The translations under genes and the position numbers were made by a program. Positions 1,957 through 57,035 of a stretch of 64,000 bases of DNA are shown in pieces (position 1 is the first letter of the stretch; the number at the start of each line of letters is the position of its first letter). The stretch is taken from NCBI RefSeq assembly GCF_003918875.1, contig NW_025764904.1, positions 2,170,001-2,234,000 of the forward strand, given 5' to 3'. The DNA is from Haliotis rubra. Its lineage: Eukaryota. The notes beneath the pieces were generated by a model. It was given only the letters and a program-made list of their open reading frames with translations. It was not told the origin of the DNA and ran no database searches.

Positions 1957-2826
1957 TTAATGGGTTAACTTCGATAAACAGGGGTTAACTTTGATTGTGG
2001 ACATCTTTTTAGGAGGTGGCATCTGTTTCTTCAGCCGCTGTTGACGTTGCTGGTTTCGCTTGTAGAAGTCATTGAAATTGGCAGCGATTATGGCAATGGG
2101 CATCGGAATGACAAGAATCCCGAGAAGAGAACAGGTCGACCCCACCAGGTAACCACACACCCCAGATGGAACATAGTCCCCATATCCTACCGTTGTCATA
2201 GTAACCACTGCCCACCAGATTGATATTGGTACGGTGTCGAAGTGATTGTTTTCAAATTCGCAGTAATATTGTATAGATCCAAACACTGTCGCGAATATCG
2301 TGAAGCAAATCCCCAACAGGATTAGTTCCGATTTGCTACGGTTGATGGCCAAAAATATCACCTTCAGTCCGGTAAATCGCTCCGAAAGTCGTAAAAAGCG
2401 GAAAAGCCGGAATATATAGAAACTTCGAAGTACAACATACAAAATGAACATGTCGTAGTTTTTGGCAACGAATCCATTTCTGAATCCCATCTCGGTGAGA
2501 TACACACTCCATCCACCGGAAATCGTGACGATGTCGACCCATGTGAGGAACCTCTTCATGAACTTCCGTTTCCGTGCGCATGACAGGAAGTGAAGGATGA
2601 ACTCCACGGTAAAGATACAGAGGCAAACAAGATCAATGGCGCTCAGGGAAGGGTACACCTTCGTAAACATCAACAGTTCGATCTTCAAATTATTTCCACT
2701 GAGGTTCTTTCGAACTGAGCTGTTGATTTCTGCACCCGAGATTGGCACACGGAATTCAAGCATTGTTTCCAGACAATAGTTGATAGCAGACACAGCCACG
2801 AGGACCATAAAAACAGTGTTCCAGAT
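1957..2826 (-). CDS. Kv channel gene 1, exon 2 (S1-S6 transmembrane domain); joins exon 1 at 13442-13909 to give ~445 aa Shaw/Kv3-like subunit
   Basis: Six TM segments, S2 FTVEF, S3 VDIV, S4 LRSFYIFRLFRFLRL, pore WWAVVTMTTVGYGD, S6 GILVIPMPIAII. Splice acceptor tattttcag|ATCTGG at 2826, phase 0; stop at 1957. Confidence 0.93.
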   Translation of the reverse strand: MWNTVFMVLVAVSAINYCLETMLEFRVPISGAEINSSVRKNLSGNNLKIELLMFTKVYPSLSAIDLVCLCIFTVEFILHFLSCARKRKFMKRFLTWVDIVTISGGWSVYLTEMGFRNGFVAKNYDMFILYVVLRSFYIFRLFRFLRLSERFTGLKVIFLAINRSKSELILLGICFTIFATVFGSIQYYCEFENNHFDTVPISIWWAVVTMTTVGYGDYVPSGVCGYLVGSTCSLLGILVIPMPIAIIAANFNDFYKRNQQRQQRLKKQMPPPKKMSTIKVNPCLSKLTH

Positions 2827-5081
2827 CTGAAAATATAATTTGGAAAATATGTTAGGCAAGTTAGCTTGTATATTGATTAAATCTCTTTGGACTTCCGTTG
2901 CCAGTCTAAGAAACGAGATAGTGCTGTAGCCATTGATCCATGATCCATGTATCCATATTCCAGCAATATTCCAGCTATATCAATATATGTTATCGAGTAT
3001 GGACCAGGCAATCCGGTGATAAACATCATGAGCATCTATCTACGAAACTGGAATACTATAGCATGCGTCAACCAAGCAAGCGAGCCTGACCACACAATCA
3101 CGTTAGTAGAAGCTATACCAGCTATTGATACTATGACTAACGACCAAGGAAAGTCTATTCATCTTTGTGGACCAGTATTTCTGTCAATGGGTTTGTTGGT
3201 GACACAGTTGTAATTTACTTGATTTCATTCATTGTGCGTGTCTGAACTGCAAAGTGGTTAGTGTACGGCACACTGGAAACTGGAAGAAGTCATCGTGAAG
3301 TTGCCAATGTGATCAATGTTTGACAGTCGGTGATCAGCAGACTATACCAACAAACCACAGCTGACAATGGACCCCGTTCAGGTCGTCCCTGGTCAGTGTC
3401 TCCGATTCACCTTTTACTTCCTTGATAGGTGCAATCGTGTCTAGCAGCCTCGAATTTTAAACTCATATGTCGCTATAACAGAACGAAACCAGCTCCATAT
3501 TTTGCACCAAAACAAACGGTCAAAGAACAGGATGTTGTATGTTGCAAGGCGTGTTGGTTTGTCTTTCATGACAACGCCCGTTCAGCAAGACACCGAGGCT
3601 ACAGCCCGATGGAACACGCTCGACCTCCAGATTTGTGCGACATACATGTATTTTACGTTATTTCCAGATATCCGTATTTCAGTGTATATCTGGAATATCT
3701 GCCAAAGAATAGGGCATACCTTCATGGCATAATAAAGTTGTTGTGGATTAACCACAGGCTAGCAAAAACATCAAGTATATACAAGATTAATTATCATTTT
3801 CATTGGATTCTCTGGTCTAGACTCGAATTGTTTACAAACAACATCGTAAGCTGTAATACTGCTGAAACAAATACGTAATCATGATATAGTCATAATTGTA
3901 CAATCGACTCGGCTTTTTGAAGAGATTTTTTATGGATGTGGAAAGGGTTTTCTAGTTTCTATTTTAAGAAGATTACGCTGGAACGACATATATTCTTTCT
4001 ACGAAGATTATAAAGAATATACGCTAACTAAAACAGTGTTTTATCAGGGTGACACCATCAAGGCCTCAGTAAATATTTTTAAATGCTTTATAGTAGACCT
4101 GTGGACGACATTTCCAAACATCTGCATCTCTTACAAAACGGATATTAGATGCAATTAAAAGTCTCAAGTTGTGCAATATATTCTCGTTGGTTTTAAGGCA
4201 AATAATTAACTTGACTTTCTATGTGTTTGTGACAAACGCCATCCGTACGATAGGATACGCTAATGTAATCATATCATATTTCGAATTGTACAACGGACAT
4301 AACAAAGATATCTAATATTATCATGATTGGTAAAGATTGGTCACAATGTTATTTACACACATCCATCTATAATAAGTTATTTTGATAACGAAGACATACT
4401 GATAGCCGTGTTACACGTACCACAGCAGGACGCAAATGTATGTGCTATCTGACAACAAAGGACATATCTTTGAAGATTTATTCGACGAATGAATCATTAT
4501 TCTTTTCAATGTTCATAAGACACTTCATCTTTGTCTTCAGTTCAAACAAATTATGGGCACAACGTGTGAAGCCTATATATGGTGTCCCCATCACTCAAAC
4601 AAATAATTGTTTTCCAGAAAAAAACATTTATTGAAACAAACGGGTATAGCTCACCGGACAATATAAACAAACATTCTACACAATATAATGTACGTGGAAT
4701 ACCAAACATTAGGTTCGATGTCAACTGAAAAAATACGAATCCAGACACAAGATACACTGAAACCTCGTCTACAGCTCGATGTTTACGTGAAACGAAATAA
4801 ATGCCACATCTAATGCATGCTTCTTTATCCGGAAATCCGGTTTCCGGAACCGGGCAGTGAATTTCAATTATCAACAGTGAGAATTACAAACCAATAGGCC
4901 CCACTTAACCCACAACGACCACGCTTGAACATGTTCATGTTGCAATCCATCACGCGGCGGTCAACATGAAAGGGTCGGGTAGCATGTCATCACAGTATTT
5001 GGCTACCTGTATACCTGTTAATTGGGCAGTCAGGTGAGATCTGACTTGAGGTTTGTGGTAAACATTAAAATGCTGTCTCCA

Positions 5082-15939: not shown

Positions 15940-18900
15940 CTATGCATCATATCGCTTCGTTGGTTTCACGACACGGCCGGACCGAGTTCTGTAGGGGAGC
16001 ACTTGAACTGTCTCTGGAGTGCTCTCAGGAACAGGGTGCTGTTTGCTGACAGGGATGCCAGGAACAACACTAGTTATTGTCTCGGGAGTGTCATCGGACT
16101 GCACATTAACCCCTCCTTCAGAGTGAATAGGAGTGTTGTCTACGGCCTCAGGCTCAGGGTCGTTGTTCACAGGGTTACGCGTCAGGCGTAACTGTTGGCG
16201 ATTTCTTCTATAGGTCTGCCCAGTCTTGGACATGACAGTGTATGTGCGACTTTTCAGCTTAGATTGCACAGTGGCTTGAGTCCATTCTTTTTGTTCATGC
16301 TGAATTGGTTGCATTCTGACATGATCGCCTATGTTGAGAGGTGGGAGTGGTTTACCAGAGTATTTGCGGTTATGTCTGGCAAGTACGTTCATGCGTCTGT
16401 CGACCAGGTCGGCTGTGGTGTTGGTCTCAGACAAAGGCTTGAGGTTGGAGACCGGGCTTGGCAGGTGAGTCTTCGTTGAACGTCCAAACAGGCGTTGGGC
16501 TGGGCTGGTCTCCATACCTTCAGTAGGAGTATTTCTAATGTTTAAGAGTCCTAGGTAGGGATCTTCTTTAGCTTCTCTGCATTTTCTCATCATTCGCTTA
16601 GCGACTTTCACAGCAGCTTCTGCGGCTCCATTCGCCTTGCTGTTCCCCGGGACTGGATAGCTCGTGAGCAAGGCCCCATGTTTCACAAAATGTCTTAAAC
16701 TTCTCACTTGTGAATTGTGGACCGCCATCACTGATGATGACGCGAGGAATGCCATGGCGGGCAAAGTGATGCTTCAGTTTGTGGAGCACTGTTTCTGAGG
16801 TAGTGTCTGGTAGGAAGTCTAACTCGAAGAAGTTGCTGTAGTAATCGGTGGTTACCAAGTAGTTTCTTCCTTCTATGGTGAAGATATCACTTCCAACTTT
16901 TTCCCAGGGGGTGATCAGGAATTTCATGCATGTAGAGTGGTTCAGGAGAATGCTTGTCACAAAACTTCTGGCATATGTCACAAGATTCTATGTACTGTCT
17001 GATGTCACTTGACATCAGGGGCCAGAAAACTGTACTCTTAGCACGTCGGAGACAAGAGTTGATTCCCATGTGTCCCACATGAAGTTTTCTCTTCAGCTCT
17101 TCACGCATTGAGGCAGGAATCACAACGCGTGATCCACGGAGAAGGAGACCATCATGCACAGTCAGTTCATCACGATAACTGAAGTAGGTCCTCAGTTCAG
17201 GCGAGAGATCATTCTTGATATCAGGCCAGCCTTGCACAATGACGGTCTTGAGTTGAGAGAGTATGTCGTCAGTCAAAGTAGCTGCTTTGATCTGATCAAG
17301 GCTGTGGTCTGTGATGTTTGTGTACATCACACTGTTCACCTGTACAGGCTCTAGCTGTGTCTTGTCAGGTAGAGGAGCTCGAGAGAGAGTATCCGCAATT
17401 GGAATAGTGGTTCCTGGTTGATACTGGAGGTCAAAGTTGTAGGTTTGAGTTCTGAGTAGGAGACTTTGGAGACGAGTAGGAGCTTTTTGACAAAGGTTTT
17501 CCTCACTATGGCGACAAGAGGCTTGTGATCTGTGATGACAGACACATGTCGGCCATAAGTATAGTGATGGAATTTCTGTAGGCCGAAGACTACTGCAAGT
17601 AGTTCTTTCTCAATTTGCGCATAACGCCTTTCTGCATCAGTTAAAGAGTGACTAGCATATGCGACAGGACGGCCTTCCTGTAACAGCACAGAACCAAGTC
17701 CATGTTCACAGACGTCATTCTCAAGAGTTGCTGGTTTTGCTGGGTCATAGAATGACAATACAGGAGTAGATGAGACTAGAAACTTGACCTTGTCGAAGGA
17801 GTCTTGTTGAGACTTGGACCATGTCCAGGGTACATCCTTCTTCGTGAGGTTGCGCATTGGAGTTGTGACTTCAGTCAGGTTTGGGAGAAATTTGGCTAGA
17901 TAGTTCACTAGCCCAAGGAAGCGACGTAGTTCCTCAGTGTTGGAAGGGACAGGCATGTCATGTATGGCCCTGACCTTCTCTGGATCCGACTTGAGTCCGT
18001 CTTTCGTGATCACATGACCCATGAATGTGATTTCACTGAGTCTGAGCTCTAACTTGTTGGGGTTAAGTCGAATGTTCTTTTCTCGACATCGAGTAAGAAA
18101 CTGCTTGAGGTTCTCATCATGGTGATTGACATCTTTTCCATGTATGAGTACGTCGTCGGCGATGCACACTACGCCAGGTAGACCATCTAACGCTTCAGTG
18201 AGTTTGCGTTGGAATATCTCAGATGAGACATTCAATCCAAAAGGGAGCCTAAGCCACCTGTACCTCCCGAAACAGGTTTGGAAAGTAGTGATGAAGCTGG
18301 ATTCTTCATCGAGTACACAATGCCAGTATCCAGATGAGAGATCGGCTTTGGAGAAGACACGAGACTGTCCGAGTTCATGGAGAGTGTCCTCAAGAATGGG
18401 AAGAGTATAGTGTTCCCGTTGGAGTGCTTTATTGAGTTCTTGTGGGTCAAGACAAATCCTGAGATCACCTGAGCGCTTTTGAGTAATGGCGATTTGGCTT
18501 ACCCATGGAGTGGGCTGACTGACCGGAGCAATTACACCAAGTTTCTGCATACGATCCAGTTCAGCTTTCAGTTTCGGACGGAGAGTAATCGGCACACGAC
18601 GAGAGGGCATGACAACAGGGGTCACAGTGTCATCCACAGAGAGATGGACGGTGCCGTCAAAACTACCTAAAATCCCTTGAAGAACATCTTTGTAGTTGTC
18701 CTCAATTTGCACGTAAGACACTCGCTCAATGTTATTCTCATTGAACGACACAAGTCCCATCTGTGTAGCTGCACGTACACCAAGAAGAGGGGTCAACTCA
18801 TCCTCGACAATTGTGAATTCGACATTGTATTTCTTCATATTAGCTGGGTTGCTTACAGAGAGTCGTATTGACCCAAGTGGAGTAACGTCGGAGTTGTTCC

Positions 18901-19117
18901 ACATCTTGAGATTCTTGGTTGTGGGTTGGAGTTCACCAATCTTGTCTTGAACTACAGTCACAGGTAAAACATTCACAGAAGCTCCAGGATCGATGGTGAA
19001 GATGACGTCACAGTCCGCGACTGTCATGCGACACTGAACAGGTCTCTGAGGTTTGGCTTGTACAGAGAATACCCAATCCTCCTCATGATCCAACGAATCA
19101 TCATTCGATGATTTCAC
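15940..19117 (-). pseudogene. pol: Gypsy pol (protease-RT-RNaseH-integrase), split over 4 reading frames
   Basis: PR IDPGAS; RT LRICLD, FSKADL..GYW, LPFGL, IADD; RH YAQIEKELLAVVFG, TDHKPL; IN HVGHMG...CDIC, PWEKVGSDIF, SDGGPQF, NGAAEAAV. Confidence 0.92.
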
Positions 19118-19142
19118 ATTATTGACTTTGTGGTTTCTGTTT

Positions 19143-19968
19143 TCAAAGAGTCACATTTAGAAGAGTAATGGTTCTTGCGTTTACATTTGGAGCATGTCTT
19201 TCCCCATGCTGGACACTGTTCTTTATCATAACGTGAGTATTTCCACAATAAAGACATTCTCTGGTTTGAGCAGATGAGTGACTAGTAGTTTGTTGTCTGT
19301 TGTGAGACTGAGAAGAGTTTGAAGAGTGAGGCCTAGCCTTGTTAGCACCTTTCTGACTGTTCTTAGCAGGTCTGTGAGAAACTTTATTCACAAGTTCAGG
19401 TCTGAGAACCTTAGATTGAGTAGAGGCATTTTCAGAAGCTTTGCAAATGTCAATACATCTTTCTAGAGTTAAGCCTCGTTCTCTCAACAAAGATTGCTGA
19501 GTTGTCTGATCTCTAATCCCTAGCACAAGACGATCTCTAACAATAGAGGGTACACACTCCCTGCAATAGTTGCATGTTTTTACAAGATTTCTGATTGCAC
19601 CATGAAATGATTCAAACGATTCACCTTCCTTCTGACGTCTGTTATTGAAGACAAAACGTTCATATGTTTCATTTACTTCTCTTATTGCAAATGCATCAAA
19701 CTTTTCAATGATTTCTGCTACAGTCCTTTCCTCTTCAGGAGTAGTAAAGTGAAATCCATTATAGATTTTCATGGCATCATCACTGAGAGTGTTTAGAATC
19801 ATGGCAACTTGATACTTGTGAGGATAGTCAGATAGCTTAGTGAGAATGTAGTAGTTTCTCCATTTTTGACGAAAATGTTTCGGCAATGTTGGAGTCAAGA
19901 TTGAAGTTTGGAGGTCTAATTCCGCTAACCGGTTTGAGAACTGGTTGTGCCTGGACTTGATCTACCAT
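19143..19968 (-). pseudogene. gag: Gypsy gag (frameshifted)
   Basis: NETYERFVFNNRRQKEGESF, IVRDRLVLGI, and a double Zn-knuckle CLYCGNTH...CPAWGKTCSKCKRKNH read across a frameshift (Mag hallmark). Confidence 0.85.
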
Positions 19969-29613: not shown

Positions 29614-30459
29614 ACGTGTGTGGGCCTCACAGACACTTACAATCAATAATGCAGTTGAAGTAAGAAGACCATTTGAATGAGACATTCTCTTAAAGACAAA
29701 ATGGCGAATTTAAGACAGACTGCTGAATTTTCACACCTACTGGAGCAGTACCGTCAAACGGATGGTGTTTGATTGAGACCGGGTCCTAAAAATGGCACCA
29801 ACACTCGTCTTGTTACATTAATTGGACCAGTCTGGTCCTGTTTTGGGTATTGTGAATTGGCATTTAACTGGCCTGTGATAACTTCATGAAATTGTGGGTC
29901 CAGTCGTTGTTCCATTCGCTAAAATTATTTTCGGGAATTCTGATGATGACAATGCCAGACCATCACCGTTTATCCCACCCGTGAAGATCCGTGTTAGAAT
30001 AGGTCTTCAGCAACCCATGCTTGTCGCAATATTAACACGGCAAAACTAGACAAAGTTTTACCAATATTTATGACAGTATATATTATTGAAAACTGGACAT
30101 GTACAGATTAACTGACCTCTGTTCCCAATCTTCAAGCTGCCAAGGGTCACATTGATAACGAACATCCGAAACCAGTATCTGGTCCGGGTCTGCAGATAGC
30201 AATAAACTAATCAAATTCACTGTGAACTTCACCCATCAACACCGATGTCTTCAATACGTTTATGAAAATTATCATATAATCCGGTCAAGATAGAGTAGCT
30301 TAAGTGCGCAGTTGGCACCGTATCGTCAGTCGAGTTAGGCAATAGGATTTAGATATAGCAACTGAAGTTCACAACAACAACTTTATCGTCAGTGTATCAG
30401 TAAATGGGATTATCTATGATAACTGGAATAGGTATAAAACAGGGACAACACACAGTCAC

Positions 30460-31069: not shown

Positions 31070-31893
31070 GTTGTGTTGTGTGTGGGTTGGTATGGGCAGA
31101 CCTCTTGCCAAGCGAGCTGATTCCCCAAAACTCGCGTTTTAAACTCGCGTTTTAATAGCCATGTAGCTGGAATATTGCAAACACCGATCTCCGATGAGGC
31201 TTCATACGGACATTTGAGAGCCTGGTTCAGTCCCTTGGCATGTCCCAATAGAGCATCTATGCGATGTTCTCGGGTGTATGCCAGAGACCTAGAGACCACC
31301 AGGGGTAGTTGGCTGAGTAAACGAGGGGATACCACAGGCACATTAATTGACAGTATACCATGAAAATTAGGCGTATGTATTGCTCACCATCGTGACACAC
31401 CAAATATTGATCTCCACGCCAGAAATGAATTACACAGACATTTATCGTCAATACTCGATCCCTAACATTTCATCAGTTCCTTTATTTCTGTTGGTAACAC
31501 ATTACTGATTAATCCAAAGTATAATTTAGAAGTCTTTCGTGATCATTAACGCCTGTGGTTTGTTTTGTTGATTTCATCAATATGTTTCATTGGTCGTCAT
31601 GACAACATGACATGTCGATTGCATTTTGATGGACAGCGATCACTTAGTTATATATGACAAGCAATATCAACGAAGCGCATTTACAAATACCAATAACTCC
31701 CGATCCGATTATCTAACCGTATCACTACCAATTCTACCAAACAGTCGATCAACGAAATGTGATTACTCTAAAAGCCTCCAAATAAACGCCGACATGACGA
31801 CTATTTGCATAACAAGTCTCTACATTTACACTAGGGGAAGGCATTGTCTAACATATCAGACTGGACACAATCTCCGTGATCTGTAGTTTGTCC

Positions 31894-32451
31894 ATGCGAC
31901 TTCATGGCATAGTTGGAGCTTTACATCCCACTCTGCGTTTAGCAGAGATTTCGTATGGACGTAGAAAGGGTTCTGCAGTTTCTATTCCAATGATGAATGT
32001 CATAACCATCAATGTTGGAGGAACGTTGTTCCAAACATCGTTGGCAACTCTAAACCAGGTCCCAGACACGTTACTGTCTAATGAAAGTCTCCTCTCTCAG
32101 AACTTCCAGCCCGATAAGCAAATCTACTTCTTCGACAGAGATCCCCAGATGTTTCATTACATCCTCAACTACTACAGAACGGGAGAGCTTCATCTTCCTC
32201 CAGGAGCTTGCAGCTCGTCCATCAAGAAGGAGCTTCATTTCTGGTGCATCCCTGAGACACATGTGTCCGAGTGCTGCTGGAAGGTGCTTTACAAGGTCCA
32301 GAACGACATGGCGGTCCTCGCCAAGCTTAATCAAGTGTTTCATGATGAAGTGTCTGACTTCTGTATGTCCAAGAAAATGGCGGGTCAGTCAAGAGTCCGA
32401 CATGCTGTCTGGATGTTCCTGGAGTATCCGGGATCATCTTTGCCAGCCAAA
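31894..32451 (+). CDS. Kv channel gene 2, exon 1 (T1/BTB domain); start is ATG 31894 or ATG 31990
   Basis: ITINVGGTLF, YFFDRDP, ILNYYRTGELH, HX5CX20CC (HLPPGAC...VSECC); donor GCCAAA|gtaaga at 32451/32452, phase 0. Confidence 0.9.
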
Positions 32452-32551
32452 GTAAGAAATTATGTTTGTTTCATATTAAATGTAACATATGTTATATTTT
32501 GCATTACATTTTCTCAGTAAAGTACAGATTCTAGCAATTTTGTTGGTTTGA

Positions 32552-32644
32552 GGCCCATCCTGGATTCGAAGCCACACCCTCAGAGTCAGGCACCTAATTG
32601 CCAGCACACATAGTAAGCGCCTAACCCGCTCAGCCACCGCGGCT
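32552..32644 (-). mobile_element. tRNA-like (long variable arm, Ser/Leu-type) SINE head or tRNA pseudogene in the gene 2 intron
   Basis: A box TGGCTGAGCGG and B box GCTTCGAATCC on the minus strand; no clean cloverleaf. Confidence 0.55.
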
Positions 32645-32837
32645 CTTGCTGAGGAAGTGTAATCCCAAATTATAAAAGTAGGTCCAACTTTAGCCCCAGG
32701 TGAAAATTGACAAAAACAGAAACTTCCATTGCTTACAGAAGTCCAGAAAAAAACAGAACTGTTTAGCAATTTAATTTCGTAAAACAAATGTTAAAGACTA
32801 TGACATAATTCAAACCGTGGGTCATGCTCTGTTTCAG

Positions 32838-33734
32838 CTGTGGGAAAAGTTCTTCTTCACGCTGATATGCACCTCGACCCTGGTGTTCATGTTTGAAACC
32901 GTGAAAAGCTTCAGAGAAGTAGATCCCGACATAAAGACCAAATGCAACATCACTAAGATTTTAAACGGAACAGTACTTTTTCGGGGATGGAAAAATGAGC
33001 TGGCTTTTTTCACCACTAGACCGTTCCTTTTTTTGTCTCACATCGATCTAGTTTTGGCGGTGATATTTACAATCGAATTTGCAGTCCGATTCATCACATG
33101 TCCGCGAAAGTGCAACTTTCTTAGGAGTTTACTCAATATGATTGACCTCCTGTTTTTGTTATGCAAATGGCCCTCTTATTACATGGAAGGATATGCGTGT
33201 GTGCTAAACAGCACCAATATGTTGATGTATATCGTTCTGAAGGGACTAACCTTTTCGAGAATATTCCGACTATTCCGTATCGGAAGGTCATGTCAAGGGT
33301 TCAAGGTCATGTTAGTGGCGCTCAAGTCCAGCTCGGGTGAACTCTGTCTTATGGTTGGGAGTTTCATCTGTGTGACTCTTATGTTCGCTGTTTTGGCGTT
33401 TCTTAGTGAACTGCGTGAGGCTACCTTCTCAAATGTTCTGTCGGCGTGGTGGTGGGCGGTGGTTACGATGACGACGGTAGGCTATGGCGATATCTACCCG
33501 GTCAGTGCTACTGGTCAAGTGATAGCGTCGATGTGTGCTGTGACAGGGATGGTTATTCTCACCCTACCTATTGCTATTATTGGTACAAATTTCGCGGAGT
33601 ACTATAGTGTCAACCGAGAAAGGGAGTTATATGGAGGAAAGCAAACTAAGTGTGAAATGATGATGGCAAATGAGAAGAAAGGAGCTCTTTTAACAAGGAA
33701 TAAAATACATCACACTAAAGTGACCAAGTTTTGA
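32838..33734 (+). CDS. Kv channel gene 2, exon 2 (S1-S6); spliced product ~452-484 aa, Shaw/Kv3-like
   Basis: Acceptor ctgtttcag|CTGTGG; FTIEF, NMIDL, S4 LKGLTFSRIFRLFRIGR, WWWAVVTMTTVGYGD, S6 GMVILTLPIAII. The 386-bp intron is at the same position as in gene 1. Confidence 0.93.
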   Translation: MWEKFFFTLICTSTLVFMFETVKSFREVDPDIKTKCNITKILNGTVLFRGWKNELAFFTTRPFLFLSHIDLVLAVIFTIEFAVRFITCPRKCNFLRSLLNMIDLLFLLCKWPSYYMEGYACVLNSTNMLMYIVLKGLTFSRIFRLFRIGRSCQGFKVMLVALKSSSGELCLMVGSFICVTLMFAVLAFLSELREATFSNVLSAWWWAVVTMTTVGYGDIYPVSATGQVIASMCAVTGMVILTLPIAIIGTNFAEYYSVNRERELYGGKQTKCEMMMANEKKGALLTRNKIHHTKVTKF

Positions 33735-42587: not shown

Positions 42588-44118
42588 AACTCTGTCAAAA
42601 AAAGAAACGCAACCCCTGTCCTCAGATATGAAAAATTCGTTTGAATGAAGTTATTGCTTCCAAACTAAATGTTATTCGAATGTATTGAAATGATACACGT
42701 AATTAATGAAGATTACCATCCAAACAACTGCATTTGTACGCATAAGTGTATTTTATTGCTTATTCCGTCACAACGCATGAAATGACCCTCATGGTGACTT
42801 CGCACAAAAAAAACACATGCAAATCATGAAAATGGCAGTTAATGTAGGGGTGTATAAAAGCCCATGTGCTTCCGTATTATATTCATTCATTTGTCGCCGA
42901 AAAGCTGTGTTAAAAATGCCACGATTGAGTGCTGCCGACCGAAATATCGCCATTGGTCGTGTTCAAGCCGGAGAAAGTTTTGGAACTGTTGCACGGCACC
43001 TAAATGTTCACAAAACAACGATATCCCGACTTTGGAGCCGCTACAACAACTTCAATTTGACCAACGATCGCCCGAGAAGTGGAAGGCCAAGAATCACGAC
43101 CCCCCTTCAAGATCGGTACATCCGGGTCCATCACCTGCGTAATCGGCATGCCCTACCAACCGTGACTGCCACACAAATACCAGGTTTGAGGAGAGTGTCA
43201 GCTCAAACGATTAGGAACCGTCTGAAAGAAGCGGGTTTACGTGCCTGTAGACCAGTTGTTGGACCTGTACTACGCCCCCTACATCGACGCCGACGACTCA
43301 GGTGGTGCAACAACGTAAGGATACGGACTTTACAAAACTGGAGGCGAATCTGGTTTTCTGATGAATCACGTTTTCTTTTGCAACGTCACGACGGAAGACA
43401 GCGTCTGTATAGGAGACGTCATAAACGTTTAGCGCCCATCTGCGTCCGACAGGTGGACAGATTTGGCGGAGAAAGCGTCATGGTTTGGGGAACCATCTCA
43501 TACAACCAGAAATCTGACTTGGTGATCGTTCCAGGGAACCTGACAGCCCAACGTTACATCAACCACGTGTTAGAGCTTCACCTTCTCCCGATTATTGACC
43601 AACAGACACAGATTTTTCAACGGGACAACGCCCGGCCTCATACTGCACGTGCAACAATGAACTTCCCTGCAGAATTCCAACGTCAATGTCTTGCCATGAC
43701 CCTCTAAATCACCAGACCTCAACCCTATTGAACACCTGTGGGATACTCTGGATCGACGCGTACGTCATCGTCAGCCGCCGCCACAGACGCTGCAACAGCT
43801 CGCCGTTGCACTGCAGGAGGAGTGGAGAGCCATTCCCCAGGAAAGAATCCGGCGTCTTATCCGTTCTTGTCCAAGGAGATGCCGTGCAGTGATTGCAGCG
43901 AGTGGTGCTCATACGAGATACTGAGACAGACGCCCCCCTGGTGACAAACTGGTGTCTGTGAGATGACTTTTTAAAATGACAATTTTAAACATGCCCATCT
44001 GGGTTATTATTCTGCCAAATTTCAGACTTCTGTCTTAAATAATAAAAATGCCGTGTCGTCCTAAAACTTCAGATCAAAATCTCTAAAATACAGGGGTTGC
44101 GTTTCTTTTTTGACAGTT
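42588..44118 (+). mobile_element. Tc1 (DD34E) transposon, near full length
   Basis: TIRs CTGTCAAAAAA(A)GAAACGCAACCCCTGT at both ends, TA flanks. Confidence 0.95.
42916..43924 (+). pseudogene. Tc1 transposase with one frameshift (~43666) and a TGG>TGA stop (43697)
   Basis: MPRLS, GRPR, WFSDESRF, VMVWG, QRDNARPH, SPDLNPIEHLW; 34 residues lie between the second D and E when repaired. Confidence 0.92.
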
Positions 44119-47354: not shown

Positions 47355-47597
47355 ACCCGTGAAGATACGAGTTAGAACTGATCTTCAGCAACACATGCTT
47401 GTTGGAAGGGGTAACTAACGGGATCGGGTGGTTAGGCTCGCTGACTTGGTTGAGACATGTCATCGTATGCCAATTACATATGTCGACGCTCATGCTGTTG
47501 ATCACTGGGTTGTCTGGTCCAGACTCGATTATTTACAGACCGCCGTAATATAGCTGGAACATTGTTGAGTGCGGCGTTAAACAACAAACAAACAAAC
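47355..47597 (+). mobile_element. Family B retroposon, full length
   Basis: ACCCGTGAAGAT head through (AAAC)n tail. Further copies at ~436(-), 812(-), 2950(-), 9602, 29977 (5' part), 42081, 49581, 51485, 51930, 56245-56468(-). Confidence 0.87.
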
Positions 47598-49541: not shown

Positions 49542-50645
49542 ATGGCGTTTGTGAATGGTTATATGATTAGCAAACAAAGCACCTGTGAAGATCCAGGTTA
49601 GAATCGGTCTTCAGTAACCCATGCTTGTCGTAAGAGGCGACTAATGGGATCGGATGTTCAGACTTGGTTGACACATGTCATCGCATCCCGATCGCGTAGA
49701 TTGATGCTCATGCTGTTGATCTCTGGGTTGTCTGGTCCAGACTCGATTATTTACAGACCGCCGCCATATATCTGGAACATTGCTGAATATAGCGTTAAAC
49801 AACAAAACCAACAAAGCGAGAGATAGTGGTGGTAAATATTATAAGTGTGATACCCACATCTTATGGTGGGTATTGTAAAATAATATGCAAACACTCTCTT
49901 CAAAGACATATTGATCTAACAGTTTATTGCACATACCAAAAACAGAGGTCATGGGGTAGTCTAGTGGCTGAAGCGTTCGCTCGTCACGCCAAACACACGG
50001 GTTCGATTCCTTGCATAGTTAAAATACCTGAAGCCCATTTCTGGTGTCCCCCCACGTTGGTATATCTGGAATATTGCTAAAAGCGGCGTACAGGCATACT
50101 CACTCTATTAATGCATCGTGACATCTTCTATTCACCCAGACATCTGGAATTATCCAGATCTCATCAACGACCTACCGTACAAAGTACACACATCTGCAAC
50201 GACGAATTCGCAGCATCATGTAATAATTCTCTCCACTATCTGAACTCACATTCAGACACTTCCATACTCACTTCAACACTCGCATGGGTCAGCCACACAC
50301 CTTCGTGCTCAACTGTAGCCAACAACCATACACTAACAACAACTAGCATACAGCCACACTCGTACATTCAGCCACACACTCACACACTCAACTGTTAACA
50401 ACACACACACACACACATACACACACATTCAAGCCCACTCACCCACAAACAACCATCTACAACCAACCATTCAAGCTGCTGTTCCAGAACACAAACATAC
50501 ACTCAACTATCCACCCACGCACCTAACGATCCACTCACACACTCAACTCTCCGCTCACACACTAAACTATATACTCACACACACACACACGCACACACAC
50601 ATGCTCAACTAGGCTCACTAATTCAACCACACTCTCATAGGCTCC

Positions 50646-50700
<55 letters not shown>

Positions 50701-51537
50701 GAGCGCGCATATACTCAACATCACAACCACGTACTCGACATTTACACGTTAATTTGGTTGAATCGTTCCGTAAATGATACTTACTTATGTTATTTTACTC
50801 ATTTTAACCACCTGAAATCTTCTCGCTTGACAGGCACAGATTAAAAGATGCGCTCATAAAAGACCTTTCTGTGGCAGGTTCGTCATTTCACCGAAGTAAC
50901 AATATGTTATTTTTAACAGAATATCTGCATGTTTACAGGCTCAACTACTGGCGCAACCATCCTCACATAACCACCAACTCACATGTTCACCTACACATTC
51001 AAATGGTGGACCATCTAGACACTTAAATGTTCAGTAAGATTCTGGCATTTCTAATCACACACTCATATACTCAGTCACCCCACCAAATACTCAACAACAC
51101 ACTCTCATGTTCAACAGCCACATATTCTGTCATACAGACCCTGAAACATATACCCAATGTAGCCCAGGCAAGTCTAGAAATTGTGGCAAGTCTAGATAAT
51201 CACAGTTTCAGTGAAGAAAGTCTCTGTGACTCCTATTCATTATATATCATTAACATAATTTTAAAAACGTGTTTTCTGTCAAATTTGTTCATTTCAGAGA
51301 CTAGATGTGAGTCTACCAGGCACACTGTATAACTACACTCACTCAACCCAGCATATCAAAGAACCCTTCTTTCAAAACTAAACGTCGTCTCTATGTAATC
51401 AACCAAATACGATATCACACGCTTCCAAAATACACGCACGTGTCCGGCTCGCTGTTCATCCTGCATTAGTCACACCTGTCGCAGACCCGTGAAGATCCCG
51501 GTTAGAACTGATCTTCGGCAACCCATGCTTGTCTTAA

Positions 51538-51917
51538 TAATAATAATAATAATGAGTCCATTTATATAGCGCCAAACTCCACACTAGGTATGCTCATAGC
51601 GCTAACAATCAAGGCACAGCACAATATTACCCCGAATAACCCAAGCTGCCTGTTAGGCGCTAGAAGGTTATAGTCATATGACTTTTTTCCACCGGGTACC
51701 CATTTTCTGCTGGGTGAACAGAGACAATTTTGAAGAAACTCACTTGCCTAAGGTGAGACCACATGTGCCACATGTGCTTCGTTGTGGGGCAGGACTCAAG
51801 TCCTAGAAACTCTCAGGAGTCAAGCTGCCAAACACGGTCACCCATCCAAGGACTCTCCGAGCTCGACGCTGCTTAACTTTACCGATTTGTGACCTGAGCT
51901 TTGAGCACACCGCCACC
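51538..51917 (-). mobile_element. 5S rRNA-derived SINE (SINE3) with CORE-like body and L2-type (ATT)n tail
   Basis: Minus strand AAGTTAAGCAGCGTCGAGCTCGGAGAGTCCTTGGATGGGTGACC matches the 5S internal promoter (A box-IE-C box); GGCAAGT...CTCTGTTCACCCAGCAGAAAATGGGTACC is CORE-like; GCGCTATATAAAT...(ATT)n tail; 7-bp TSD GTCTTAA. Confidence 0.82.
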
Positions 51918-52164
51918 GTCTTAAAAGGGACCCGTGAAGATCCGGGTTAGAACTGATCTTCAGCAACCCATGCTTGTCGTAAGAGGTGACTAACGGGATC
52001 GGGTGGTCAGGCTTGGTGACTTGGTTGTGCTTCCCAATTTTTGTAGATCACTGGTGATGCTGTCGATCACTGGATTGTCTGGTCCAGACTCTATTATTTA
52101 CAGACCGCCGTCATATAGTTATATACCTATTGAATATTGCGTTAAAAAGCAAACAAACAAAAAA

Positions 52165-52515
52165 ACACCTGTTGCATATCCGATTCTGACACATGTTATC
52201 GTACCTCAACTATGTAGGTGGAAGCTCATGATGTCAATCACTTGATTGTCTGGTCCAGACTCTATTATTTACAGACCGCCGCCATATAGTCATATACCTA
52301 TTGAGTGCTGTGTTAAACAAACAAGCAAACAAACAAACACACCTGTTGCATATCCGATTCTGACACATGTTATCGTACCTCAACTACGTAGATCGAAGCT
52401 CGTGATGTCAATCACTTGATTGTCTAGTCCAGGCTCAGTTACTACAGACCGCCCTTATATAGTTATATATGTTTTGAGTGAGGTGTTAAACAAACAAACA
52501 AACACTCCTGTTGCA
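52165..52515 (+). repeat. Two extra tandem copies (~175 bp) of the family B 3' half plus flank
   Basis: CCTGTTGCATATCCGATTCTGACACATG...CAAACAAAC unit repeated after the copy starting at 51930. Confidence 0.8.
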
Positions 52516-53440: not shown

Positions 53441-53680
53441 GTTGGTTGGTTGGTTTGTTGCTTAACGCCGCACTATTGCAGCTATATGGTGGCGGTCTGT
53501 AAATGATCGTGTTTGGACCAGACAATCTAGTGATCAACAACATGAGCATCAATCTACGCAAATGGGAACCGATGACATGTGTCAACCAAGTCAGCGAGCC
53601 TGACCACCCGATCCCGTTAGTCGCCTCTTACGACAAACATGGGTTACTGAAGATAAATTCTTACCCGGAACTTCACGGGT
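53441..53680 (-). mobile_element. Family B retroposon, full length
   Basis: Reverse-complement consensus ending CTTCACGGGT. Confidence 0.87.
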
Positions 53681-56867: not shown

Positions 56868-57035
56868 GAGTGAGTGAGTGACTATGGTTTTACGCTGCTT
56901 TTAGCAATATTCCAGCAATATCACGGCGGTTGACACCAGAAATGGGCTTCACACATTGTACCCATGTGGGGAATCGAACCCGGGTCTTCGGCGTCACAAG
57001 CCAACGCATTAACCACTAGGCTACCCAACCGCCCC
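56868..57035 (-). mobile_element. Family A SINE
   Basis: Reverse-complement consensus match. Confidence 0.88.

What the first reader, a model, noticed from the sequence alone, without database searches (positions are those of the whole stretch)
51930..51997. Promoter-less retroposon whose precise 5' end is a compact pseudoknotted RNA: candidate new self-cleaving/processing ribozyme
Seen: family B (~240 bp, ~20 copies) has a LINE-type 3' tail but no tRNA, 5S or 7SL head and no A/B box. About 14 copies start at the same base, ACCCGTGAAG (9602, 13079, 23898, 25674, 29977, 47355, 49581, 51485, 51930, 58810; minus strand 37928, 53680, 56468, 63765), in unrelated flanks apart from 9602/13079, which are the two halves of the duplication. 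The first ~68 nt can fold as a closing stem CCCGU/ACGGG, a hairpin GAAGAUC/G(A/G)UCUUC whose loop GGGUU(A) pairs with downstream (U)AACCC (H-type pseudoknot), and a hairpin GUCG-UAAGAGG-CGAC followed by UA. Common variants preserve pairing (GGTCTTC vs GATCTTC; GGGGATC in 25674 gives G-U). Established: non-LTR elements lacking their own promoter (R2, RTE, L1Tc, Penelope) cut themselves from read-through transcripts with 5' HDV-like, twister or hammerhead ribozymes. Inference: this head does that job. By eye it matches none of the hammerhead, HDV, twister or pistol consensus cores, so it may be an undescribed motif.
Basis: partly seen in the sequence, partly recalled or inferred. Interest (0 to 1): 0.85.

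Follow-up and report, generated by a model that had tools for sequence, protein, structure and literature searches.

The report
Abalone SINE headed by LINE RNA module
This very abundant abalone short jumping element starts with a real folded RNA piece borrowed from the leader of its partner long jumping gene, but the evidence suggests its RNA starts by capped transcription rather than by cutting itself, and the element family was already described in 2016.

Summary
About 14 window copies and thousands of genome copies start at the same base, ACCCGTGAAG, in unrelated flanks.

The family fits the published abalone "LP-SINE" (Matetovici 2016, PMC4758252), whose ~68-70-nt head is homologous to the 5' end of LINE 5' UTRs. 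I found the same module in Haliotis I/Nimb-type LINEs. There it lies directly after a 59-nt P4-less HDV-like ribozyme that sets the LINE's first base. The SINE carries the module but not the ribozyme.

The fold is partly proven. The 7-bp hairpin has three compensatory pairs between SINE and LINE, a fourth in another LINE copy, and an AU/GU/GC series among SINE subfamilies. The pseudoknot has one covarying pair, and a rival pairing fits equally well.

The ribozyme reading is disfavoured:
- Full-length LINE copies keep the ribozyme upstream of the module.
- No Rfam family matches the head.
- About 27-42% of full-length SINE copies carry one untemplated G before base 1, the known mark of a reverse-transcribed cap. 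This G is absent from a tRNA-derived SINE and from the ribozyme-cut LINE of the same tail group.

The head's RNA-level role is unknown. The scan has noted this head many times on other DNA of this genome, with one follow-up (s1-327959).

The parts
51930..52175 (+). Full SINE B (LP-SINE) copy that holds the finding: head, body, LINE-type 3' region and a (CAAA)n-like tail
   Evidence: the family consensus is about 228 nt plus an (ACTC)n or (CAAA)n tail.
51930..51999 (+). Head module, element bases 1-70; the base before it (51929) is G
   Evidence: CM R1 scores 103 bits here. The module is homologous to the post-ribozyme 5' UTR module of Haliotis LINEs.
51936..51961 (+). Hairpin S2: bases 7-13 GAAGAUC pair with 26-32 GAUCUUC; 12-nt loop CGGGUUAGAACU
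   Evidence: SINE versus LINE: 8:31 AU to UA, 9:30 AU to GC, 12:27 UA to AU. The L038 LINE has 12:27 CG. Whole-genome counts for 11:28 are AU 5929, GU 3878, GC 2138, AC 365.
51944..51969 (+). Proposed pseudoknot: loop bases 15-19 GGGUU with 36-40 AACCC
   Evidence: Pair 18:37 is UA in the SINE, GC in L052:1272 and GU in L052:3373 and L054:3374. The rival pairing 1-5 with 14-18 also covaries: 1:18 is AU in the SINE and CG in the LINE.
51931..51997 (+). Closing stem S1: bases 2-6 CCCGU with 64-68 ACGGG
   Evidence: Present in the MFE folds. The LINE keeps it with a G5-U65 wobble. No double change was seen, and within-genome copies are uninformative.
51976..51990 (+). Hairpin S3: GUCGU-AAGAG-GUGAC; bases 47-51 pair with 57-61
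   Evidence: The sequence is nearly the same in the H. rufescens and H. cracherodii LINEs. It is absent from the L038 LINE variant.
53607..53680 (-). Head of another full-length SINE B copy, with a 13-16 nt target-site duplication and no extra base
47355..47428 (+). Head of a full-length SINE B copy with one extra G between the target-site duplication and base 1
49581..49654 (+). Head of a full-length SINE B copy
51485..51537 (+). Head-only fragment (bases 1-53), followed by (TAA)n and another SINE
56880..57035 (-). tRNA-derived SINE 'T' with a SINE B-like 3' stem-loop and (ACTC)n tail; used as the Pol III control

Best explanation
Family B is the abalone LP-SINE, a roughly 230-nt non-autonomous retroposon with on the order of 10^5 copies. 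It is probably mobilised by an RNase H-bearing I/Nimb-type LINE, because its 3' stem-loop and (ACTC)n tail resemble that LINE's.

Its 68-70-nt head is a copy of a structured RNA module from the 5' UTR of that LINE group. In the LINE the module directly follows a 59-nt P4-less HDV-like ribozyme, and that ribozyme sets the LINE's first base. The SINE took the module without the ribozyme.

Shown: the shared 5' end; the homology to the LINE module; the ribozyme-module tandem; covariation in the main hairpin; and an untemplated G at -1 that is specific to this SINE.

Inferred: the SINE RNA is a capped, probably Pol II, transcript that starts at A1 from an internal promoter in or near the head, as Matetovici et al. 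proposed. The extra G would then be the reverse-transcribed cap. The conserved fold would serve an RNA-level role shared with the LINE, such as binding the LINE's proteins or the ribosome. It would not serve self-cleavage.
For: - Common 5' end.
- Literature: Haliotis LP-SINEs have a ~70-bp head homologous to the first ~68 bp of LINE 5' UTRs, with variable target-site duplications and terminal tandem repeats.
- Target-site duplications flank the copies here too.
- Similar 3' stem-loop and (ACTC)n tail in SINE B, tRNA-SINE T and the LINE in L038. The stem differs by compensating changes: CGCCGC/GCGGCG against CGTCACG/CGTGACG.
- CM R1 hits lie ~560 nt upstream of ORF1 in the H. rufescens and H. 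cracherodii LINEs, E 1e-10 to 1e-11.
- Four LINE copies with unrelated upstream flanks all begin GGCAC. The module follows base 59 directly in three of them, and after a short spacer in the L038 variant.
- Rfam HDV models match LINE bases 1-59 below the gathering score (HDV-F-prausnitzii 28.5 bits, E 9e-4) and nothing matches the module.
- Hairpin covariation.
- Base -1 is G in 3577 of 8556 SINE B copies (41.8%), against 19.9% genome G. That implies about 27% untemplated G.
- In copies with a resolved target-site duplication, 8 of about 19 have one extra G outside the duplication.
- Controls from the same tail group: tRNA-SINE T has 23.5% G before its start and 0 of 10 resolved copies with an extra G. 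The ribozyme-cut LINE has 26 G among the first 100 non-C bases listed, against 24.8 expected.
- Untemplated 5' G on L1 and SVA insertions is attributed to the reverse-transcribed m7G cap, and about 33% of SVA copies carry 5' G (PMC3287187).
Against: - No promoter activity or cap was measured, and no recognisable Inr, DPE or A-box motif is present.
- If the module is an internal promoter that starts transcription at its own first base, its position 59 nt inside the LINE is awkward.
- The extra G could be templated from master loci or reflect start-site wobble. I could not test that per subfamily genome-wide.
- I could not compare my consensus with the published Hdi/Hmi_LP or Repbase sequences, because they appear only in figures.
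- The hexamer before the tail reads AATATT here, against AATATA in the paper.
- The LINE copies that carry the full module come from other Haliotis species. The one G000 LINE copy I could read (L038) has a variant module without hairpin S3, and I did not read the 3' ends of the other-species LINEs.
- The public runs found were contigs of uncertain library type and gave no 5'-end information.
Confidence: 0.55

Rival explanations
1. The head is a new self-cleaving ribozyme that cuts at its own first base and frees the SINE RNA from read-through transcripts.
For: Exact shared 5' end with no Pol III head. Compact fold with real covariation in one hairpin and a possible pseudoknot. The size and position resemble known 5' ribozymes of non-LTR elements, such as L1Tc Pr77. 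The SINE has A at base 1 where the LINE has C, which could in principle switch activity.
Against: In the LINE the same module follows a true HDV-like ribozyme, and the four full-length copies I read keep that ribozyme; 666 genome copies of its 5' end have varied preceding bases. So the module does not cut efficiently at its 5' edge there. No Rfam ribozyme model matches the head even at E 10. The extra G at -1 is absent from the ribozyme-cut LINE of the same tail group, so SINE B RNA ends differ from 5'-OH ends. No conserved catalytic core can be named.
Confidence: 0.06
2. The head is an exonuclease-stalling structure (xrRNA-like). Read-through or decapped transcripts are trimmed 5' to 3' until the pseudoknot blocks the nuclease, which leaves a fixed 5' end. 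The LINE is protected instead by the 5'-OH left by its ribozyme.
For: Hairpin-loop to flank pseudoknots, on either side of the loop, are the architecture of plant-virus xrRNAs (from memory, not tested). This model reconciles a promoter-less SINE with the LINE keeping its ribozyme. A stall one base early in masters that have G at -1 could mimic an extra G.
Against: No Rfam xrRNA match. The G excess appears in both the A11 and G11 groups of my small sample, which fits a general cap effect better than a leftover master base. Viral-contig scans gave only chance-level hits. No direct test was possible.
Confidence: 0.1
3. The head is a decayed 3' half of a tRNA-type SINE head (variable loop plus T arm with B box), and the element is still a Pol III SINE.
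For: Bases 7-25, GAAGATCCGGGTTAGAATT, resemble GAAGACCCGGGTTCGATT in the co-resident tRNA-SINE T, which has a similar tail. A B-box-like GGTTAGAAT is present.
Against: No A box is present. ARAGORN and the Rfam tRNA model find nothing in the head. The resemblance is weaker in the LINE version of the module, GGAACCGGGGTAGAAT. The hairpin that covaries is not a tRNA pairing. The extra G is absent from the true Pol III SINE T.
Confidence: 0.05
4. The RNA does start at the head by transcription, but the G at -1 is not cap-derived. It is templated from master copies or reflects start-site wobble, so the polymerase and cap status remain open.
For: Only composition and target-site-duplication evidence is available. 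A daughter copy with an extra G that became a master would pass the G on.
Against: The frequency (27-42%) and the single-G form match cap-derived additions on L1 and SVA. The excess is specific to SINE B among three element types of one tail group.
Confidence: 0.15

Closest known systems
LP-SINEs (LINE-promoter SINEs) of gastropods and bivalves, including Haliotis diversicolor/midae Hdi/Hmi_LP (Matetovici et al. 2016, PMC4758252)
   Same: Abalone host. A head of about 68-70 nt that is not a small-RNA gene and is homologous to a LINE 5' UTR. Variable target-site duplications, terminal short tandem repeats, and the body and tail shared in modular fashion with tRNA-derived SINEs.
   Different: I could not align to the published consensus. 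The paper places the homologous stretch at the very 5' end of the Nimb and RTE LINE consensus sequences. In the Haliotis LINEs read here it follows a 59-nt HDV-like ribozyme. The paper gives no RNA fold and no cap evidence.
L1Tc/NARTc Pr77 of Trypanosoma cruzi: a 77-nt 5' module that is both an internal promoter and an HDV-like ribozyme (PMC3383444, PMC3185411)
   Same: A short 5' module shared by an autonomous LINE and its non-autonomous partner, sitting at the exact 5' end.
   Different: Pr77 folds as an HDV-like ribozyme. The abalone head does not match the HDV models. In the abalone LINE the ribozyme and the module are two adjacent, separate units, and the SINE has only the second.
HDV-like ribozymes at the 5' ends of R2, RTE and other non-LTR elements
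   Same: The related LINE here uses one (a P4-less, 59-nt form), immediately upstream of the module.
   Different: The SINE head itself lacks the P1/P2/P3/P1.1 topology, the L3 UCCUCG motif and the J4/2 C. Rfam HDV models score nothing on it.
SVA and L1: Pol II-transcribed, capped non-LTR RNAs with untemplated 5' G on full-length insertions (PMC3287187)
   Same: A single extra G between the target-site duplication and the element start in roughly a third of full-length copies.
   Different: Different LINE clade and host. Here the cap is inferred only from genomic junctions.

Membership tests
LP-SINE (Matetovici 2016) | Head of about 68-70 nt homologous to the 5' part of a LINE 5' UTR rather than to tRNA, 5S or 7SL | tested here: met
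   CM R1 hits in H. rufescens and H. cracherodii LINE 5' UTRs, E 1e-10 to 1e-11. No tRNA, 5S or 7SL hit.
LP-SINE (Matetovici 2016) | Variable target-site duplications and 3' short tandem repeats (LINE-dependent insertion) | tested here: met
   10-16 nt duplications in about 20 copies. (ACTC)n or (CAAA)n tails. The tail resembles that of the L038 LINE.
LP-SINE (Matetovici 2016) | Sequence identity to the published Haliotis Hdi/Hmi_LP consensus and to Nimb-17_LMi, I-3_DR and RTE-9_CPB | not testable with these tools
   The sequences appear only in figures and no supplement is held. Repbase is not available.
HDV-like self-cleaving ribozyme | Nested double pseudoknot (P1, P1.1, P2, P3, with or without P4) with an L3 C-rich loop and a catalytic C in J4/2, cleaving 5' of base 1 | tested here: not met
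   No HDV-family hit on the head at E up to 10. The same models do hit the LINE's first 59 nt. The head's helix order, an outer stem enclosing two hairpins, does not map onto the HDV topology (by inspection).
Hammerhead, twister, twister-sister, pistol and hatchet ribozymes | Match to the family covariance model or conserved core | tested here: not met
   Rfam 15 gathering scan of the window and an E<=10 scan of 51880-52180 gave only a chance snoRNA hit, E 0.88.
tRNA-derived (Pol III type 2) SINE | tRNA-like head with A and B boxes | tested here: not met
   ARAGORN found 0 genes and Rfam tRNA found nothing on the head. Only a B-box-like GGTTAGAAT is present, and no A box (sequence).
Capped Pol II retroposon RNA (as for L1 and SVA) | Untemplated single G between the 5' target-site duplication and the first base in a sizeable share of full-length copies | tested here: met
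   41.8% G at -1 against 19.9% background. 8 of about 19 resolved copies have the extra G. It is absent from the Pol III SINE and the ribozyme-cut LINE.
Capped Pol II retroposon RNA (as for L1 and SVA) | Direct evidence of an m7G cap, Pol II dependence or internal promoter activity | not testable with these tools
   The only public runs found were contigs of uncertain type, with no 5'-end information.
Exonuclease-resistant RNA (xrRNA) | Match to known xrRNA models, or Xrn1 stalling | tested here: inconclusive
   No Rfam hit. Stalling cannot be tested here.

The most novel reading that the evidence does not exclude
The head is a new class of portable RNA module that moves between LINE 5' UTRs and SINE heads across animal phyla. 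It would fix or protect an RNA 5' end at the RNA level, by stalling exonucleases, by weak or conditional self-cleavage, or by recruiting the LINE's proteins or the ribosome. That would make it a retrotransposition signal at the 5' rather than the 3' end.
Probability: 0.12. Interest if true: 0.8.

Novelty: already known. Interest (0 to 1): 0.35.

Why it matters
SINEs are defined as Pol III elements with small-RNA heads. A family with about 10^5 copies whose head comes from a LINE leader, and whose insertions carry a cap-like extra G, is genomic support for the proposed Pol II "LP-SINE" class. No cap or RNA-fold evidence for that class turned up in the literature I could search.

The head is also a conserved, covarying RNA fold of unknown function. 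It sits right behind a self-cleaving ribozyme in the LINE. Working out what it does could show how uncapped, ribozyme-cut LINE RNAs are translated or packaged, and why SINEs copy that piece.

For this scan, the result explains a feature that first readers have flagged many times in this genome as a candidate new ribozyme.

Tried and rejected
- Rfam gathering and E<=10 scans of the head gave nothing except a chance snoRNA hit. ARAGORN found no tRNA.
- The pair-count test on 56 genomic heads showed no significant covariation overall: 149 and 112 of 500 shuffles did as well. This is expected, because inserted copies decay neutrally. Only pair 11:28 stood out.
- The head-only copy at 29977 is followed by a host Kv-channel gene, not a LINE.
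- The divergent head-like stretch at L045:4294-4368 is not next to any ORF and is followed by an unrelated young repeat.
- The apparent second family at window 14482, L047:623 and L050:323 is one old SINE B copy in a segmental duplication.
I therefore used whole-genome pattern counts instead.
- The LINE in L038 was missed by the head model because its module is a variant without hairpin S3.
- LINE loci from Gigantopelta, H. asinina and two ENA assemblies showed no detectable module.
- Four viral-contig scans gave 0, 0 and 0 hits and one set of 13 hits. That number is close to my rough chance estimate of about 8, and the best CM score among them was E 0.24.
- The single metagenome scan returned only abalone-like SINE B copies.
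- Public runs were four small contig sets of uncertain type. Contigs run from copies of the head into unrelated upstream sequence, but nothing shows a start, an end or the strand.
- No ribozyme-to-SINE-head junction (GCTCTTC + NCCYGTGAAG) exists in the loci held.

Full report
**1. The observation**

The motif ACCCGTGAAG, with up to one mismatch, occurs 13 times in the window against 2.9 expected. BLAST with the copy at 51930-52175 finds 24 matches, and 13 or 14 of them start at query base 1. Printing 40 nt of flank shows that similarity stops exactly at that base and that the upstream DNA is unrelated. The exception is the 9602/13079 pair, which is a duplication.

In the whole 1.38-Gb assembly the 40 best copies start at base 1-6, nearly all at base 1. 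In 360 kb of sampled sequence, 73 of 101 nhmmer hits begin at model position 1-3, and the rest are scattered 5' truncations. A covariance model of the head gives 42 significant hits in 264 kb of contiguous sequence. That extrapolates to roughly 2x10^5 copies.

The family consensus is about 228 nt plus an (ACTC)n or (CAAA)n tail. Target-site duplications of 10-16 nt flank many copies. So this is a genuine, very abundant retroposon with a fixed 5' end.

**2. What the head is not**

- The Rfam gathering scan of the window finds only one tRNA-like hit, in another SINE.
- A permissive scan of 51880-52180 finds only a chance snoRNA hit at E 0.88.
- ARAGORN finds no tRNA.

No hammerhead, HDV, twister, pistol, hatchet or xrRNA model matches. 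There is a B-box-like GGTTAGAAT at bases 16-24 but no A box.

**3. Literature**

Matetovici et al. 2016 (PMC4758252) describe "LP-SINEs" in Littorina, Haliotis diversicolor and H. midae, Ostrea, Saccostrea and scallops. In these elements the first ~68-70 bp are homologous to the first ~68 bp of the 5' UTRs of Nimb-17_LMi (locust), I-3_DR (zebrafish) and RTE-9_CPB (turtle). The authors propose that this piece is a LINE promoter, possibly Pol II. They mention the L1Tc Pr77 promoter/ribozyme as an analogy. I found no later paper that uses these terms.

Host, head length, lack of a small-RNA head, target-site duplications and tandem-repeat tails all fit family B. Direct comparison with their consensus was impossible because the sequences are only in figures. 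The assembly appears to be a Haliotis, probably H. rubra: its size and contig count match what I recall of that assembly, an H. rubra protein was withheld as belonging to "the genome in which your window lies" or one very near it, and ORF1 relatives are all Haliotis.

**4. The related LINE and where the module sits in it**

A tRNA-derived SINE in the window (57035-56880, minus strand) ends with a 3' stem-loop and (ACTC)n tail like those of family B. An RNase H-bearing I/Nimb-type LINE in L038 ends the same way, and its stem differs from the SINE's by compensating changes.

Earlier notes of this scan said that the abalone LINE starts with a minimal HDV-like ribozyme followed by a pseudoknot that recurs as a SINE head. 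I tested this as follows.

- ORF1 of the L038 LINE found homologues in four Haliotis species and in Gigantopelta.
- I fetched four LINE loci.
- The head model hits L052:3373-3444 (H. rufescens), L054:3374-3444 (H. cracherodii) and L052:1272-1346. All are on the ORF1 strand, and the first two lie ~560 nt upstream of ORF1 (E 1e-10 to 1e-11).
- Alignment of these copies and of L038 shows that homology begins at GGCAC after unrelated flanks.
- The first 59 nt are GGCACUCGUGAAGAGCAACCUCCUCGUGGUGAGUGCUGGGUAGCGCUAAUAGCUCUUC. By inspection I read P1 as GGCACUC/GAGUGCU, P2 as GAAGAGC/GCUCUUC, L3 as UCCUCGU, and no P4.
- Rfam HDV models match this stretch below their gathering scores (28.5 bits, E 9e-4; 21.3 bits), and nothing matches the module.
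- In the three H. rufescens and H. cracherodii copies the module starts at the very next base: CCCCGUGUGGAACCGGGGUAGAAUAUUUCCACAGCCUCCCAUUGCUGGUCGUAUGAGGCGACUAAAAUGGG.
- The G000 copy in L038 has the ribozyme with a compensating P1 change, then a short spacer and a shorter variant of the module: hairpin GUGGACC/GGUCCAC followed by CAACCC, without hairpin S3.

Base 1 of the SINE therefore corresponds exactly to the first base after the LINE's ribozyme in the full-module copies.

**5. Is the fold real?**

The z-scores are only -1.2 to -2.1. Within-genome copies give no significant covariation overall, as expected for neutrally decaying insertions. Subfamilies and the LINE are informative.

*Hairpin 7-13/26-32*

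| Pair | SINE | LINE | Source |
|---|---|---|---|
| 8:31 | AU | UA | |
| 9:30 | AU | GC | |
| 12:27 | UA | AU (H. rufescens, H. cracherodii); CG (L038) | |

Whole-genome counts for pair 11:28 among SINE copies are AU 5929, GU 3878, GC 2138 and AC 365, an odds ratio of 9. These correspond to three large subfamilies. This hairpin is established, and the tolerated G-U states point to the RNA strand.

*The loop G-run*

Pair 18:37 is UA in the SINE, GC in one LINE copy and GU in two others.
- The rival pairing of 1-5 with 14-18 also covaries: pair 1:18 is AU in the SINE and CG in the LINE.
- The partner stem 38-43 with 64-69 is better in the LINE than in the SINE.

The closing stem and hairpin S3 are compatible with the data but are not tested by double changes.

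**6. How is the SINE's 5' end made?**

Two lines of evidence argue against self-cleavage.

*First, the LINE keeps its ribozyme.* The four full-length LINE copies I read keep the ribozyme upstream of the module, and 666 genome copies of the ribozyme's 5' end have varied preceding bases. A module that cut at its own 5' edge would remove the ribozyme.

*Second, the base before A1 is G far too often.* It is G in 28 of 48 sampled copies, while positions -2 to -8 look like background. Genome-wide it is G in 3577 of 8556 copies, or 41.8%, against 19.9% G in the sampled sequence. Among about 19 copies with a clear target-site duplication, 8 have exactly one extra G between the duplication and A1. That G is not repeated after the 3' copy of the duplication. 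Ten copies have no extra base and one has an extra A.

Two controls from the same tail group lack this excess:

| Element | 5' end made by | G at -1 | Source |
|---|---|---|---|
| SINE B | in question | 41.8% (about 49% among non-C bases, estimated) | |
| tRNA-SINE T | Pol III transcription | 23.5% (3306 of 14047); 0 of 10 resolved copies with an extra G | |
| LINE | HDV-like ribozyme cleavage | 26 of the first 100 non-C bases listed, against 24.8 expected | |

The differences are large: chi-square 837 for B against T, and Fisher p 3e-6 for B against the LINE.

[quoted passage not shown] The simplest reading is that SINE B RNA is capped, so it starts by transcription at A1. This is what the LP-SINE hypothesis predicts.

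It remains an inference. A G inherited from master loci, or start-site wobble, is not excluded. I also see no recognisable core-promoter motif.

**7. What the fold does**

This is unknown. Because the stem sequence changes while pairing is kept, a sequence-specific DNA-binding site is unlikely to explain the hairpin. An RNA-level role shared by the LINE and the SINE is more likely. Candidates are binding of LINE proteins, ribosome docking or translation of the uncapped ribozyme-cut LINE RNA, and protection of the 5' end. An xrRNA-like stalling role would also explain a fixed 5' end without a promoter, and I keep it as a minor rival.

**8. Searches elsewhere**

- Four viral-contig scans gave only chance-level hits.
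- The metagenome scan returned abalone-like SINE copies only.
- LINEs from Gigantopelta, H. asinina and two ENA assemblies have no detectable module.
- The public runs were contigs of uncertain type. They cover only the repeats and give no end information.

**9. Verdict**

The new-ribozyme part is disfavoured. The element family and the LINE origin of its head were published in 2016. New here are three points: the ribozyme-module tandem in the related LINE (also noted by earlier agents of this scan), the covariation evidence for the hairpin, and the cap-like extra G with its two internal controls.

Noticed in passing
G000:C890:714732-715593; G000:C56:152191-152324; G000:C2:4365764-4365845 (coordinates): The first ~52 nt of the SINE head recur head-to-tail at 52-bp (or 104-bp) spacing, which looks like a head-derived mini-satellite. 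The window copies at 29977-30029 and 51485-51537 also stop at about base 53.
   Followed up: no
SINE B bases ~51-99; text of PMC13170236: The pull-down probe for the causal non-coding SNP rs26532113 in ITGA8 of Haliotis gigantea (orange-muscle trait) is a copy of this SINE. The G/A SNP falls at about SINE base 72 (GGGATC[G/A]GG), so that regulatory variant lies inside an LP-SINE insertion.
   Followed up: partly
L038:2725-9500 (+): A near full-length, decayed I/Nimb-type LINE in the same contig as the window. It has a 59-nt P4-less HDV-like ribozyme with a compensating P1 change relative to the H. rufescens copies, a variant 5' module without hairpin S3, ORF1, EN, RT and RNase H, and a 3' stem-loop plus (ACTC)n tail like those of both SINE families.
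   Followed up: partly
window 56880-57035 (-) and ~45 other copies in the sampled loci: A tRNA-derived SINE (GGGGCGGTGGGGTAGCCTAGTGG...) with at least 14,000 exact-head copies. Its stretch GAAGACCCGGGTTCGATT resembles bases 7-25 of the SINE B head, which may be chance or shared ancestry.
   Followed up: partly
window 1960-2979 (-), 31852-33731 (+); L033:313-1395, L033:4611-5525, L046:766-1773: Several Kv-type potassium channel paralogues (BTB_2 plus Ion_trans) lie in a region with local segmental duplications. Examples are the 9602/13079 pair and shared flanks between L047, L050 and the window.
   Followed up: no
L045:4404-4695: A young ~290-bp interspersed repeat: 96-97% identity among the 39 best other copies, and 667 first-look candidates.
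   Followed up: no
window 17354-19150 (-); window 42781-43704 (+): An LTR-retrotransposon-type RT/RNase H ORF of 599 aa and a Tc3/mariner-type transposase fragment.
   Followed up: no
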